IMG/VR virus record: IMGVR_UViG_3300035698_022190
Location: 146,209-210,208 of that record
Length of the DNA: 64,000 bases
Reading direction: 5' to 3' (one strand)
Position 1 is the stretch's first letter; every line of letters starts with the position of its first letter. The notes under the pieces are model-generated. The model was not told the origin of the DNA, did no database searches, and saw nothing but the letters and a program-made list of their open reading frames with translations. Below, piece after piece: positions 2,329-4,548 of this stretch. The position numbers and the translations under genes were made by a program.

Positions 2329-2348
2329 TTGCGTCTCCTTTAAAATTG

Positions 2349-2414
2349 CTAAGTATGCCGGAATCGAACCGGCGTCACTCGTTTGTGAGTATATTACCCC
2401 TCTACCAATACTTA
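2349..2414 (-). tRNA. Minimal/degenerate tRNA-like RNA, no assignable anticodon
   Basis: Acceptor TAAGTAT/ATACTTA, T-arm GCCGG-TTCGATT-CCGGC, D-loop with GG; anticodon arm only ACTC-ACAAAC-GAGT; followed by CAA. Confidence 0.65.
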
Positions 2415-2462
2415 GGTTCATCTGGTCGCGAACCAGAGTCTTCTTTGACGTCAGTCAAAATT

Positions 2463-2578
2463 TTACGAGCATGCAAGTATGTGTTGGATCAGGGCACATT
2501 TAGCCGACATCCTAGGTCTCGACGTATTCTATCCGATGCACCTTGGATACATTGTATCCACGGCACTTGCGCCCGTAA
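2463..2578 (-). ncRNA. Structured RNA, unknown family
   Basis: Long closing helix TTACGGGC.GCAAGT/ACTTGC.GCTCGTAA with internal hairpins. Confidence 0.4.
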
Positions 2579-2600
2579 TAAGGCTATATTCCAAAATTTG

Positions 2601-2766
2601 TGACCAGTGGAGGATTTGAACCCCCGATTATAGAGACTAGTGAGTTTCGCTCTATTAGCCTGCTGCTTACTACGCAGCGCTACACTTGAATACCCGGCTC
2701 ACTACTATCGAATATTACCGTGCGAATGTTTTAAAGAGTCTCGCCCTCTAAAACATAAAACTGGTC
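2601..2766 (-). ncRNA. 166-nt expanded tRNA-like RNA
   Basis: Perfect acceptor GACCAGT/ACTGGTC, discriminator A then CAA; T-arm GGGGG-TTCAAAT-CCTCC; 13-bp hairpin in the D-arm position; branched interior. Confidence 0.7.
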
Positions 2767-2777
2767 ATTGCAATGTA

Positions 2778-2999
2778 TTATTTCTTCGGAGGAAGTCCAA
2801 GACTATCTTGACGCTCAAGATAATGTTCAAGGGCCTCCGTTACTACCCAGGAGAATCTTTTTGTGGTAAGACGTTTCCATCCGAATAGTCTCTTTAAAGA
2901 ATTCTTTAGAGCAGGCTCAATAGTACATTCCCACTCAACGAAGTCTCCATCGATCTCTACTTCTTTGATAATTTTAAAACTTCCTAACTTTTTCTCCAT
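2778..2999 (-). CDS. Small hypothetical protein embedded in the RNA cluster (possibly ribbon-helix-helix-like)
   Basis: AAGGA RBS; C-terminal SWVVTEALEHYLE helix. Confidence 0.6.
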   Translation of the reverse strand: MEKKLGSFKIIKEVEIDGDFVEWECTIEPALKNSLKRLFGWKRLTTKRFSWVVTEALEHYLERQDSLGLPPKK

Positions 3000-3033
3000 A
3001 TGAATATCCTTTAATTTAAAGTATTAGGAATAA

Positions 3034-3142
3034 GGCTTAACTTTTCACCGGCGACTTTCAGGATTCGAGTATGAAATGTCCCGCCCGACTTAGAGGGGCC
3101 TCCTTGCAATGATCAACCTGCACGAGCTATCTGGGTTAAGCC
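3034..3142 (-). ncRNA. 109-nt structured RNA, unknown family
   Basis: Terminal stem GGCTTAAC/GTTAAGCC, GC-rich interior, AT-rich flanks. Confidence 0.45.
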
Positions 3143-3162
3143 ATAAGTTCCTACGAAATTAA

Positions 3163-3431
3163 TTGAGACTGTCCCCGCCTGTCGGTCTTGGGTACAGTTG
3201 GACCGGCCTAGTTAGTGGCTAACTCGTAATACAGTATCGGCAATACCCCATCAGGGGTATCTGCTCTCTTCGGGTTCTCTATATAGGCTCAGTGTACAGC
3301 TATCTTCCGGACTCTGTACTCGATTACTCTATATATTTCCATCCCCGTCCTGTTAACTGAACAAAGGGGATCTGCACTAGGTTAGTATCTTACGGCCAGA
3401 TTCTGTTAGGCTACAATGCCTACAGTCTCAA
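3163..3431 (-). ncRNA. 269-nt structured RNA, unknown family
   Basis: 10-bp terminal stem TTGAGACTGT/ACAGTCTCAA and several internal helices; abuts the tRNA-Gln-like gene. Confidence 0.6.
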
Positions 3432-3436
3432 ATTTG

Positions 3437-3528
3437 ATGAATAGACAGGGTTCGAACCTGCATAGTACCGTTCAAAGCGGCGACATTTCCGAATGCACCT
3501 GCATAGTGCCATTTTATGCTACTATTCA
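3437..3528 (-). tRNA. tRNA-Gln(TTG)-like with an extra hairpin between D and anticodon arms
   Basis: Acceptor TGAATAG/CTATTCA (U1-A72); D-stem GCAT/ATGC; loop CT-TTG-AA in GCCG/CGGT; T-arm GCAGG-TTCGAAC-CCTGT; insert GCATT-CGGA-AATGT. Confidence 0.7.
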
Positions 3529-3531
3529 TTT

Positions 3532-3608
3532 TGGTATATGGGCCGCGTTGCAACCTCATGCATGCATACATGTGTATCCAAGCACAGGGACACATCCTTA
3601 CATATACC
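3532..3608 (-). ncRNA. 77-nt tRNA-His-like mimic lacking canonical D and T arms
   Basis: 8-bp terminal stem GGTATATG/CATATACC; hairpin GTGTCC-CTGTGCTT-GGATAC presenting CT-GTG. Confidence 0.4.
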
Positions 3609-3690
3609 GAGTTCGGGGCAGGCATTGAATGGACGAGTCCACTCTTACCGCCTCCACCATTCTCACCGAAGTGAAAATTTATTTGTAAAT

Positions 3691-3875
3691 TATTGTAGTG
3701 GGCAATCTGAGCTGCTCCGCTGTCACGGACACAGGCATATAATGTTCAGGGTGAATAATATACCAACAGGGTCTTATCCTATACTATGACCGACTCCCTT
3801 AATGAAACCGGCTTTTGTCCGCTGCAGAGTTAACTCGTTGCGGTTCTTGGCGGAAAATAGATTGACATTATAATA
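3691..3875. ncRNA. 185-nt structured RNA, unknown family
   Basis: Long closing helix plus TCCGCT/GGCGGA, CGGACA/TGTCCG and CTGCA/TGCGG; G-U pairs favour the plus strand. Confidence 0.4.
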
Positions 3876-3962
3876 TTGCTAGGGCACAACCCCTGCAGCT
3901 CGTACGATCGCTAGGAAGAGCGGCCTGCCGTTGGCCTATGAAGGTCCATTAATTGAATAGCG

Positions 3963-4120
3963 GACCCGCAACTGGGATCGAACCAGTGTCTCTCTTTTGA
4001 TCGGAATGACCTTTTGTGAGTTATTACATTCCTGATCCCATTTTCATGGGTGTCTCATCCTGCTCTAGTCACTAGGATAATGCTGTCGGAAGCAATTCCC
4101 AACATTTTGACTACGTGAAT
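3963..4120 (-). ncRNA. 158-nt expanded tRNA-like RNA
   Basis: T-arm ACTGG-TTCGATC-CCAGT; weak acceptor ATTCACG/TGCGGGT; D-stem TAGTCA/TGACTA with inserted hairpin. Confidence 0.55.
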
Positions 4121-4548
4121 TTTGTTTCCATATTAACATCCGTAGGTTTGTTCCTGGGCACGTATAAGTTTTACAAAATATACAGTGATTTGATGTTGCT
4201 CCTATTAGTGCGATACCTTTTACGCAAAGCGCCATGTTAATAAAACTATTCTTGATGAGATACGCTCATCTATTCTTTCTAACGTAGTAGTTGGTAGCCC
4301 GGTATACTTAATTGCTTCCAAGTTTGAAATTGTTCGCGAGGGCGGATTGATTCCCGAAGGGGTCACCGCCAACCTCCACCTCACCATACAGTCGCGTGAA
4401 CTGTACTTATGGTAAGACTTTGGATTCAAGTCGCCACCTGAATGCATGTGCTGCACTAGTTTGTTGCCAGCCAGCTTCTGCTTCTCACTTACGTTTAATA
4501 AAGGTTTTGTTCCGGTCTGTTGTTCAGTAGACATTATGGAACAGTTTT

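What the first reader, a model, noticed from the sequence alone, without database searches (positions are those of the whole stretch)
2598..2766. 166-nt giant tRNA-like RNA
Seen: perfect acceptor and T-arm. The D-arm is replaced by a 13-bp hairpin. The anticodon position holds a TAGTGAG/CTCACTA helix opening into a branched domain with GCTGC/GCAGC and an unpaired UAUUCAAG. It lacks the G3-U70 of tmRNA. Speculation: the UUCAA could present a UCA anticodon after processing, but no canonical stem flanks it.
Basis: partly seen in the sequence, partly recalled or inferred. Interest (0 to 1): 0.7.

Follow-up and report, generated by a model that had tools for sequence, protein, structure and literature searches.

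The report
Oversized tRNA-like RNA gene in phage
A jumbo phage from a salt lake carries a 166-base gene with the ends, elbow and flanks of a transfer RNA but about 90 extra structured bases and no usable anticodon, so it is probably cut out like a tRNA yet does some other, still unknown, job.

Summary
On the minus strand (2766 to 2601) there is a perfect acceptor stem, a canonical T-arm, a 13-bp hairpin and further helices, and the fold is far more stable than shuffles (z = -4.6). The gene is single-copy, in a 210-kb jumbo phage that has about 30 ordinary tRNAs and its own tmRNA. Its leader (CAAU|G1) and trailer (A73|CAA) match the context of the phage's real tRNAs, and its last 34 nt resemble a relative's tRNA-Val, so it is tRNA-derived and probably processed like a tRNA. 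No tRNA or tmRNA model recognises it. Deleting any one or two segments never gives a decoding-competent anticodon loop. The genome shows no stop-codon recoding, so the UCA-suppressor idea is unsupported. It lies in a 1.9-kb ORF-free stretch with two other anticodon-defective tRNA-likes, and related phages carry other oversized tRNA-like genes. My best reading is a non-decoding tRNA-shaped stable RNA: a natural tRNA scaffold carrying an extra domain. One untested oddity is an internal 10-codon frame ending Ala-Ala-stop-stop in a hairpin loop, as in tmRNA tags. Only one partial natural variant was found, and no RNA data, so the function remains inferred.

The parts
2601..2766 (-). The 166-nt tRNA-like gene (G1 = 2766, discriminator A73 = 2601)
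   Evidence: Sequence read; fold z = -4.62; helices and pair probabilities; single copy in the genome.
2760..2767 (-). Acceptor 5' strand UGACCAGU (U-1 plus G1-U7), preceded by leader ...GCAAU
   Evidence: 8/8 Watson-Crick pairs with 2608-2601 (I22, 85). 16 of 29 cluster tRNAs have a leader ending AAU or AUU.
2593..2608 (-). Acceptor 3' strand ACUGGUC, discriminator A (2601) and trailer CAAAUUUU (2600-2593)
   Evidence: 'CA' follows the discriminator in 20 of 29 cluster tRNAs against a 5.8% background. Homology of the X8/X12 variant stops at 2598. 85% identity to the 3' end of tRNA-Val(UAC) in relative G004.
2609..2625 (-). T-arm GGGGG-UUCAAAU-CCUCC
   Evidence: pair probability at least 0.91.
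2726..2756 (-). H1: 13-bp hairpin AUGUUUUAGAGGG-CGAGA-CUCUUUAAAACAU inserted between acceptor and D region
   Evidence: minimum pair probability 0.79. No copy elsewhere in the genome or in GTDB genomes.
2682..2723 (-). H2 / D-like region: GCAC-GGU-AAUAUUCG ... CGGGUAUU-CAA-GUGU. It holds GG (2719-2718), the motif AUUCGA, and the loop AUAGUAGUGAGC
   Evidence: MFE and pair probabilities 0.69-0.82.
2656..2681 (-). H3: AGC-GCUGC-[GUAGUAA]-GCAGC-AG-GCU. The tip is a 5-bp stem with a 7-nt loop that has U at position 2 and A at position 6
   Evidence: probability 0.91 for the inner stem. Variant substitutions 2679 C>U (C-G to U.G) and 2670 G>A (in the loop), in RNA sense.
2630..2655 (-). H4: AUAGAG(C)-loop-(G)CUCUAU, in the position of a long variable arm. 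The loop contains CUCACUA
   Evidence: probability 0.57. Variant 2648 G>A lies in the loop.
2698..2704 (-). UAGUGAG, complementary to CUCACUA (2644-2638).
   Evidence: (I6). Forcing it as a nested helix costs 3.7 kcal/mol and it has probability about 0.01.
2667..2702 (-). Internal open frame GUG AGC CGG GUA UUC AAG UGU AGC GCU GCG UAG UAA (VSRVFKCSAA**), preceded by UAGUA
   Evidence: Read directly from the sequence. The Ala-Ala-stop-stop pattern occurs in 0.39% of 20,000 dinucleotide shuffles. Both variant changes inside it are silent. This part is a hypothesis only.
2349..2414 (-). Neighbouring 66-nt tRNA with a shortened anticodon arm (4-bp stem, 6-nt loop ACAAAC)
   Evidence: Rfam tRNA 41.6 bits. 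ARAGORN finds it only at a relaxed threshold, with a 2-base 'anticodon'. Trailer is G|CAAUUUU.
3437..3528 (-). 92-nt tRNA-like with acceptor, D-arm and T-arm intact but an aberrant 38-nt middle
   Evidence: No Rfam hit at E<5. Trailer is U|CAAAUUU.
2329..4219 (-). 1.9-kb ORF-poor 'RNA island' that holds all three elements, interrupted only by the 73-aa gene at 2778-2999
   Evidence: ORF lists. GC 0.44-0.475 against about 0.40 in the flanks. Longest open frame is 107 codons. No minus-strand terminator between 4581 and 1900.

Best explanation
The element is a real, single-copy, tRNA-derived gene that no longer works as a decoder. SHOWN: it keeps the parts of a tRNA that processing and end-recognising enzymes read. 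These are a 7-bp acceptor stem with A73, a canonical T-arm, a GG-containing D-like segment that could close the elbow, and the same 5' CAAU|G1 and N73|CAA flanks as the phage's genuine tRNAs. About 90 extra nucleotides form a 13-bp hairpin and elongated arms, and there is no canonical anticodon arm at the canonical distance. INFERRED: it is transcribed with the leftward genes on either side. Host RNase P cuts its 5' end, and the machinery that finishes the phage's CCA-less tRNAs trims its 3' end and completes it to CCA. It then accumulates as a stable ~166-nt tRNA-shaped RNA. In that RNA the tRNA part serves as handle and stabiliser, like an engineered tRNA scaffold, and the inserted domain, or the anticodon-less mimic as a whole, does the work. 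The most likely work is binding, and so titrating or decoying, a protein that recognises the acceptor/T-arm/elbow of tRNAs. A side effect is that the polycistronic transcript is cut between the flanking genes. The specific partner is unknown.
For: Structure is far beyond chance and every major helix is perfect. The flanks match the phage's tRNAs: 'CA' after the discriminator in 20/29 tRNAs against 5.8% background, and an AAU/AUU leader in 16/29; the element has both. The last 34 nt are 85% identical to tRNA-Val(UAC) of relative G004. A natural variant in two marine runs shares the element, but its similarity ends at 2598, 3 nt past the discriminator, so the element behaves as a discrete module. 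The three mapped substitutions fall in two loops and one C-G to U.G pair. It is not a decoder: there is no tRNA call, no deletion gives a U33/R37 loop, and the phage already has tRNAs for all amino acids. Two neighbours share the same defect, with intact acceptor/T/D regions and an aberrant anticodon region. Relatives carry other oversized tRNA-like genes of 94-141 nt. No terminator separates it from the flanking co-directional genes.
Against: No expression, end-mapping or aminoacylation data were available; no RNA run was listed. No homologue was recovered that would allow covariation analysis, so only the thermodynamic model supports the inner helices. The element is absent from family-level relatives and from the closest relatives of the flanking genes, so it is dispensable for the lineage. 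The proposed partner or decoy function is pure inference. The phage lacks its own CCA-adding enzyme, so maturation would depend on the host.
Confidence: 0.45

Rival explanations
1. It is an intron- or insert-containing tRNA gene. The 13-bp hairpin and the inner domain are either removed (by an unknown endonuclease plus the phage's RtcB ligase) or tolerated, and the product decodes. The decoding tip would be the canonical 5-bp/7-nt tip of H3 (anticodon AGU) or a loop formed after excision.
For: The phage encodes RtcB and a second RNA ligase. With the hairpin and a 46-nt inner segment deleted, ARAGORN accepts a class-II-like cloverleaf at its default threshold. The H3 tip has U33 and A37. Relative G001 has a 105-nt tRNA-Met(CAU) with a canonical anticodon arm and about 50 nt in place of the D-arm. 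Oversized phage 'pseudo-tRNAs' with enigmatic introns are reported for Lak megaphages (bioRxiv 10.1101/356790).
Against: Only 15 of 30,375 double deletions pass, and none gives U33 (the loops are CC+NGAAA). There is no group I intron or other ribozyme match, no bulge-helix-bulge motif, and no splicing endonuclease. The H3 'anticodon' differs between close variants (AGU against AAU). H3 is 4 bp longer than an anticodon arm. No tRNA gap needs filling. RtcB in jumbo phages is usually read as tRNA repair (PMC7824862).
Confidence: 0.15
2. It is purely a cis-acting processing signal, a tRNA-like 'punctuation' mark. It exists so that RNase P and 3' nucleases cut the operon transcript between the 73-aa and 122-aa genes, and the released RNA has no function of its own.
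For: It lies between co-directional genes with no terminator. Three tRNA-likes with dispensable anticodon regions sit between ORFs outside the tRNA cluster. The flanks match tRNA processing contexts.
Against: Punctuation needs only the acceptor/T minihelix. It does not explain 90 extra nucleotides of perfect helices with z = -4.6, nor retention of the inner domain at about 95% identity in a variant that has a different downstream context.
Confidence: 0.15
3. It is a decaying tRNA pseudogene in an accessory region, with hairpin insertions, and has no function.
For: It is absent from relatives, and the region is hypervariable. The neighbours are also defective tRNAs. The three stretches of the island outside the three elements fold only modestly better than shuffles (z = -1.7 to -2.4).
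Against: The acceptor (8/8), T-arm, 13-bp hairpin and H3 have no mismatch at all. The tRNA-type leader and trailer are intact. The variant's substitutions avoid disrupting pairs. z = -4.6.
Confidence: 0.15
4. It is a miniature tmRNA-like rescue RNA. A tRNA-like domain is charged with some amino acid other than alanine. Translation then resumes on an internal frame (UAGUA|GUG AGC CGG GUA UUC AAG UGU AGC GCU GCG UAG UAA) that adds VSRVFKCSAA.
For: The frame ends Ala-Ala plus two stops lying in a hairpin loop, as in the Rfam tmRNA consensus. That pattern occurs in 0.39% of shuffles. UAGUA lies immediately upstream, with A at -4, as in E. coli UAGUC|GCA, where A86 sets the frame and the pseudoknots are replaceable (PMC2481249). 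GG...AUUCGA recalls tmRNA GGAUUCGAC. Both variant substitutions in the frame are silent: AGC>AGU and UAG>UAA.
Against: There is no G3:U70, no pseudoknot, and no tmRNA hit by Rfam or ARAGORN. Only about 5 nt separate the D-like region from the resume codon. UAG is over-represented in the element (8 copies, by my count). The pattern was found post hoc among many features inspected. The phage already has a genuine tmRNA of 108.5 bits and no SmpB. The silent changes are equally explained by a loop position and a G.U pair.
Confidence: 0.05

Closest known systems
Oversized 'pseudo-tRNAs' with enigmatic introns in huge phages (Lak megaphages; Devoto et al., bioRxiv 10.1101/356790)
   Same: These are tRNA-like genes of large phages that are much longer than 90 nt, are rejected by bacterial tRNA finders, and have no recognised intron class. 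They are variable between related genomes.
   Different: In Lak phages a standard tRNA with an assignable anticodon is predicted once one insert in the anticodon loop is removed. Here two inserts are needed, and even then no U33/R37 loop results. No sequence comparison with the Lak genes was made.
tmRNA (Rfam RF00023)
   Same: Both have a tRNA-like acceptor/T-arm domain without an anticodon, a D-region motif GG..UUCGA, and a short internal frame ending Ala-Ala-stop with the stop in a hairpin loop.
   Different: The element has no G3:U70, no pseudoknots and no long P2 helix. It is 166 nt against 403 nt for the phage's own tmRNA. The covariance model does not match. It has an extra 13-bp hairpin in the tRNA-like domain.
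Engineered tRNA scaffolds for recombinant RNA (Ponchon and Dardel; PMC3753655 listed, not read)
   Same: Both have a tRNA acceptor/T/D framework with a foreign structured RNA in place of the anticodon arm, so that cellular tRNA enzymes process and stabilise it (from my knowledge of the method).
   Different: Those are artificial constructs. This one is natural, carries a second insertion after the acceptor stem, and its cargo has no known function.
Bacterial Y RNAs (YrlA) that mimic tRNA and work with Ro60/Rsr and RtcB
   Same: Both are non-decoding RNAs with a T-arm/D-loop tRNA mimic, found in bacteria and phages, in genomes with RtcB (background knowledge).
   Different: In YrlA the RNA ends form the Ro-binding stem, not the acceptor. 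The phage has no TROVE/Ro protein, and no Rfam Y-RNA family matches.
Phage T4 stable RNAs species 1 and 2 (rnaC, rnaD)
   Same: These are small stable RNAs of unknown function, encoded beside phage tRNA genes and matured with them (from memory; not checked here).
   Different: No sequence or structure comparison was possible with these tools. The T4 RNAs lie in the tRNA cluster, whereas this element lies 40 kb from it.

Membership tests
tRNA (Rfam RF00005 / ARAGORN) | 7-bp acceptor stem with discriminator, and a 5-bp T-stem with a UUCRANY loop | tested here: met
   G1-U7 pairs with A66-C72, A73 is present, and the T-arm is GGGGG-UUCAAAU-CCUCC.
tRNA (Rfam RF00005 / ARAGORN) | 5-bp anticodon stem with a 7-nt loop (U33, R37) at the canonical position, and total length about 70-95 nt | tested here: not met
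   The element is 166 nt. No deletion of one or two segments yields a loop with U33. The only canonical-looking loop (GUAGUAA) tops a 9-bp arm and varies between variants.
tRNA (Rfam RF00005 / ARAGORN) | Recognition by the covariance model or tRNA finder | tested here: not met
   No hit at Rfam E<10. ARAGORN finds nothing with or without introns, even at lowered thresholds.
tRNA (Rfam RF00005 / ARAGORN) | D-arm with G18 G19 able to pair with the T-loop | tested here: inconclusive
   GG at 2719-2718 lies in an internal loop of H2. Only a 3-bp UCG/CGA D-stem alternative exists.
tmRNA (RF00023) | G3:U70 alanine identity pair | tested here: not met
   The third pair is C3:G70, and there is no G.U anywhere in the acceptor.
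tmRNA (RF00023) | Pseudoknots and a long P2 helix; recognition by the covariance model or ARAGORN | tested here: not met
   No tmRNA family hit at E<10, and ARAGORN -m finds none. The phage's real tmRNA scores 108.5 bits.
tmRNA (RF00023) | Internal tag frame ending in Ala-Ala plus a stop in a hairpin loop, with a conserved A four nt before the resume codon | tested here: inconclusive
   The pattern is present (UAGUA|GUG...GCU GCG UAG UAA) and occurs in 0.39% of shuffles. It was found post hoc and there is no functional evidence.
Group I or archaeal-type intron-containing tRNA | Group I intron core, or a bulge-helix-bulge motif with a splicing endonuclease | tested here: not met
   No Rfam intron or ribozyme hit. 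The insert helices have no 3-nt bulges. PF01974 is absent from the genome. The phage's own tmRNA points to a bacterial host (inference).
Bacterial tRNA-Sec / opal suppressor | UCA anticodon in a 7-nt loop closed by a stem; 8/5 acceptor/T geometry; 6-bp D-stem | tested here: not met
   The 8+5 geometry is formally possible, but U-1 belongs to the common CAAU leader. UCA (2688-2686) has no flanking stem and is mostly paired in the MFE. The genome shows no TGA recoding.
Y RNA / YrlA | Ro60 (TROVE) partner and a Ro-binding stem formed by the RNA ends | tested here: not met
   PF05731 is absent. The RNA ends form an acceptor stem. There is no Rfam hit.

The most novel reading that the evidence does not exclude
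The element is a miniature trans-translation RNA. It would be a 166-nt tRNA-like domain without the alanine identity pair, carrying a 10-codon tag frame (VSRVFKCSAA) with tmRNA-like upstream context and tandem stops in a hairpin loop. That would make it a pseudoknot-free, non-alanine relative or analogue of tmRNA, encoded by a phage beside its ordinary tmRNA.
Probability: 0.05. Interest if true: 0.9.

Novelty: new variant of a known kind. Interest (0 to 1): 0.5.

Why it matters
Large phages carry many tRNA genes, and oversized, unclassifiable 'pseudo-tRNAs' have been noted in them without explanation. This element is a clean and extreme case. The tRNA parts read by processing enzymes are perfectly kept, the decoding part is gone, and about 90 nt of new structure has been added. 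It sits beside two other anticodon-defective tRNA-likes in a phage that also encodes RtcB, an RNA ligase and a tmRNA. If such RNAs are stable tRNA mimics, they would be a new class of phage non-coding RNA acting on tRNA-binding machinery, for example host tRNA-targeting defences. They would also be a natural counterpart of the tRNA scaffolds used in RNA engineering. If the tmRNA-like frame is real, it would change what is thought to be the minimal requirement for trans-translation.

Tried and rejected
- **Searches for homologues.**
  - Flanking genes: in IMG/VR, searches with both flanking proteins and the 638-aa neighbour found no relatives.
  - Element patterns in IMG/VR: three patterns from the element or its variant's flank gave no match.
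  - Other collections: the JGI metagenome scan gave one chance hit in a high-GC coding region (L015). GTDB genomes gave nothing with the T-arm/acceptor or hairpin patterns. INPHARED phages gave nothing by blastn. A spurious antisense ORF used as a protein handle found nothing.
  - Flanking-gene relatives: these relatives (L009-L014, 57-90% identity) have different non-coding DNA at the homologous place.
  - RNA polymerase route: this route gave 79 related IMG/VR loci. A single-sequence covariance model (R1) searched over 21 of those records hit only ordinary tRNAs, such as tRNA-Val in G003/G004/G005/G009. It found nothing else in the phage's own genome. The flanking genes are absent from five of those relatives.
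- **RNA evidence.** No RNA run was listed. Logan contigs gave only one partial variant.
- **Gap-filling idea.** I considered that the island supplies the Asp, Glu and Met tRNAs that ARAGORN missed in the cluster. I dropped this because they are found there at a lower threshold and by Rfam.
- **CRISPR idea.** I considered that the 13-bp hairpin (GUUUUAGAG...) mimics a CRISPR repeat. There was no matching repeat in GTDB genomes and no copy in the phage.
- **Archaeal-virus idea with bulge-helix-bulge introns.** The phage tmRNA points to a bacterial host, and there is no EndA.
- **Other giant candidates.** 181-, 294- and 456-nt 'giant' candidates in the main cluster rest on weak, GU-rich or distant acceptor pairings that are expected by chance.

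Full report
**What is there.** The finding lies on the minus strand. Read 5' to 3' from 2767 to 2598, the sequence has these parts:
- leader ...GCAAU, then acceptor GACCAGU (2766-2760);
- UUU, then a perfect 13-bp hairpin (2756-2726);
- a GG-containing segment GCACGGUAAUAUUCGA;
- a stretch holding UAGUGAG, GGGUAUUCAAGUGU and the hairpin AGC-GCUGC-GUAGUAA-GCAGC-AG-GCU;
- AUAGAGCGAAACUCACUAGUCUCUAU;
- the T-arm GGGGG-UUCAAAU-CCUCC (2625-2609);
- acceptor 3' strand ACUGGUC, discriminator A (2601), and trailer CAAAUUUU.

ARAGORN and Rfam do not call it as tRNA, tmRNA or anything else, even at E<10 or with introns allowed.

**Whose genome.** The window is bases 146209-210208 of a 210-kb virus record rated complete. 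It is seen in salt-lake metagenomes.
- The phage has a fused beta-beta' RNA polymerase.
- It has a tmRNA scoring 108.5 bits, which argues for a bacterial host.
- It has a cluster of about 30 tRNAs at 97-108 kb covering all amino acids once lower-scoring calls are included.
- It has a separate 98-nt tRNA(UCA) candidate, plus RtcB and a second RNA ligase.
- It has no SmpB, Ro/TROVE, splicing endonuclease or CCA-adding enzyme.
- All three stop codons end long ORFs (TAA 100, TGA 40, TAG 25), and no recoding signal is visible.

**It is tRNA-derived and probably matured like a tRNA.** In this phage most real tRNA genes sit in a characteristic context. 'CA' follows the discriminator in 20 of 29 (background 5.8%), and the leader ends in AAU or AUU in 16 of 29. 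The element has both features (GCAAU|G1 ... A73|CAAAUUUU). Its two odd neighbours have the same trailer. Its last 34 nt are 85% identical to the 3' end of tRNA-Val(UAC) in a related phage. The U-1:A73 pair that makes the stem look 8 bp long is simply the last base of the common CAAU leader.

**It is a discrete module.** Two marine metagenome runs hold a variant, 6 differences over 2598-2711. Its similarity stops at 2598, three bases past the discriminator, and different sequence follows. The three substitutions that could be placed are:
- 2670 G>A, in the GUAGUAA loop;
- 2648 G>A, in the H4 loop;
- 2679 C>U, which turns a C-G pair into U.G.

All three fit the structure, but three sites prove nothing. 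The closest relatives of the flanking genes carry other non-coding DNA at this spot. Family-level relatives, found through the RNA polymerase, have neither the element nor the flanking genes. The element is single-copy in its own genome.

**Secondary structure.** The minimum-energy fold is a cloverleaf-like six-way junction:
- the acceptor;
- H1, the 13-bp extra hairpin;
- H2, in the D-arm position (GCAC/GUGU plus AAUAUUCG/CGGGUAUU, with GG in an internal loop);
- H3, in the anticodon-arm position (3+5 bp with an AG bulge and a 7-nt loop GUAGUAA);
- H4, in the variable-arm position (AUAGAG/CUCUAU);
- the T-arm.

Its two strands are exactly the loops of H2 and H4, so it could form as a 7-bp kissing contact that would tie the extra arms together. 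Without homologues, none of the inner helices could be tested by covariation. A single-sequence covariance model served only as a search tool.

**Not a decoder.**
- I deleted every single segment (2,091 variants), and every second segment after removing the hairpin (30,375 variants), and asked ARAGORN for a tRNA.
- Nothing passed with one deletion. With two deletions, 15 variants passed. All used UAGUGAG/CUCACUA as the anticodon stem, and their loops were built from CC... and ...GAAA. None had U33.
- The only canonical-looking loop (G-U-AGU-A-A on H3) sits on an arm 4 bp too long. Its middle base differs in the variant (AGU against AAU), which is hard to reconcile with a fixed decoding role.

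**Context.**
- The element lies in a 1.9-kb stretch (2329-4219) without credible ORFs apart from one 73-aa gene. GC there is 0.44-0.475 against about 0.40 nearby.
- The stretch also holds a 66-nt tRNA with a 4-bp/6-nt anticodon arm (Rfam 41.6 bits).
- It holds a 92-nt tRNA-like with a good acceptor, D-arm and T-arm but an aberrant middle.
- It holds an orphan T-arm at 3987-3971.
- No minus-strand terminator separates these from the flanking co-directional genes.
- Related phages G001 and G004 have their own oversized tRNA-like genes. Examples are 141 and 122 nt long, plus a 105-nt tRNA-Met(CAU) with about 50 nt in place of the D-arm.
- Oversized phage pseudo-tRNAs with 'enigmatic introns' have been described for Lak megaphages (bioRxiv 10.1101/356790).

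**Interpretation.**
- Best reading (0.45): a non-decoding, tRNA-shaped stable RNA. The tRNA parts recruit RNase P and 3'-end/CCA maturation and give stability. The added domain, or the mimic as a whole, acts by binding a tRNA-recognising factor. Its excision also cuts the operon transcript.
- Rivals: a spliced or insert-tolerant decoding tRNA (0.15), pure processing punctuation (0.15), a decaying pseudogene (0.15), and a miniature tmRNA-like RNA (0.05).

**The tmRNA-like oddity.**
- In one frame the RNA reads UAGUA|GUG AGC CGG GUA UUC AAG UGU AGC GCU GCG UAG UAA. That is ten codons ending Ala-Ala and two stops placed in the H3 loop.
- The Rfam tmRNA consensus puts the tag's stop in a hairpin loop and has GGaUUCGAC in the D region.
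- E. coli tmRNA has UAGUC before the resume codon, with a conserved A four bases upstream, and its pseudoknots are replaceable (PMC2481249).
- Ala-Ala-stop-stop occurs in 0.39% of 20,000 dinucleotide shuffles, and in 0.17% with at least 8 open codons before it.
- The two variant changes inside the frame are silent (AGC>AGU and UAG>UAA).
- Against it: there is no G3:U70, no pseudoknot and no model match. The distance from the tRNA-like core to the resume codon is very short. UAG is enriched in the element. I found the pattern post hoc.
- I report it as the most novel reading not excluded, not as the explanation.

**Verdict.** The element is real and well delimited, and almost certainly a functional RNA of tRNA ancestry. 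It is a new, extreme variant of the poorly understood oversized tRNA-like genes of large phages. Its function remains inferred, because neither transcripts nor informative homologues could be obtained.

Noticed in passing
window 2349-2414 (-): A 66-nt tRNA (Rfam 41.6 bits) whose anticodon arm is 3 nt short: a 4-bp stem and a 6-nt loop ACAAAC, for which ARAGORN reports a 2-base 'anticodon'. It ends 20 nt before the ribosome-binding site of the next gene. The 90%-identical relative of that gene has unrelated sequence here.
   Followed up: partly
window 3437-3528 (-): A 92-nt tRNA-like with a 7-bp acceptor, a D-arm with GG, a T-arm and a U|CAAAUUU trailer. Its 38-nt middle includes an 8-bp hairpin capped by a tetraloop instead of an anticodon loop. 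ARAGORN's 'Asp plus 9-nt intron' call is unconvincing.
   Followed up: partly
window 3000-4219 (-): 1.2 kb with no credible ORF under code 11 or with TGA or TAG read through. GC reaches 0.475. There is an orphan T-arm ACUGG-UUCGAUC-CCAGU at 3987-3971 and no Rfam or phage-database match. The stretch folds modestly better than shuffles (z = -1.7 to -2.4).
   Followed up: partly
window 2886-2917 against 2724-2741, 2628-2639 and 2657-2664: Three segments of the element are complementary to one 32-nt stretch inside the upstream 73-aa gene's mRNA: 18 nt at 83%, 12 nt at 92%, and 8 nt at 100%. Part of this comes from the palindrome CUUUAAAG, and significance was not assessed.
   Followed up: no
genome 95541-95943 (-), outside the window (L019:14540-14944): The phage's own tmRNA (108.5 bits) has a predicted tag GKNIPVNLLAQGQVGHSNFAYAG that does not end in the usual LAA. 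The relatives' tmRNAs encode GKTQFALAA and GRPAVKLAA.
   Followed up: no
genome 65786-65883 (+), outside the window: A 98-nt tRNA with anticodon UCA, a long variable arm and encoded CCA (ARAGORN calls it 'SeC'; Rfam gives 24 bits). Relatives also carry tRNA(CUA) and tRNA(UCA) calls. These are suppressor-like tRNAs in genomes that otherwise look like code 11.
   Followed up: partly
G001:C1:122525-122665, G001:C1:118579-118683, G001:C1:130596-130689, G004:C1:112536-112657 (all -): Related jumbo phages have their own oversized tRNA-like genes of 141, 105, 94 and 122 nt. The 105-nt one has a canonical Met(CAU) anticodon arm, variable loop and T-arm, but about 50 nt where the D-arm should be.
   Followed up: partly
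L013:840-1005 and L014:680-845; L012:730-1005: Downstream of homologues of the 73-aa gene, other phages carry different structured non-coding RNAs. One is about 165 nt, conserved between L013 and L014, closed by CUCUUGC/GCAAGAG, and contains a T-arm-like CUAGG-UUAAAAU-CCUAG. Another is about 270 nt in L012, closed by UAGAGCAG/CUGCUCUA, with a tRNA-Leu-like D-arm. Neither has an Rfam match.
   Followed up: no
genome 124533-125717 (-) and 134492-135007 (-), outside the window: The phage encodes RtcB (two matches, 300.9 and 91.5 bits, in one 394-aa ORF) and a PF09414 RNA ligase. It has no splicing endonuclease, Ro protein, SmpB or CCA-adding enzyme.
   Followed up: yes
window 2421-2437 (-): Just upstream of the 66-nt tRNA there is a T-arm-like hairpin UCUGG-UUCGCGA-CCAGA with no acceptor partner.
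   Followed up: no
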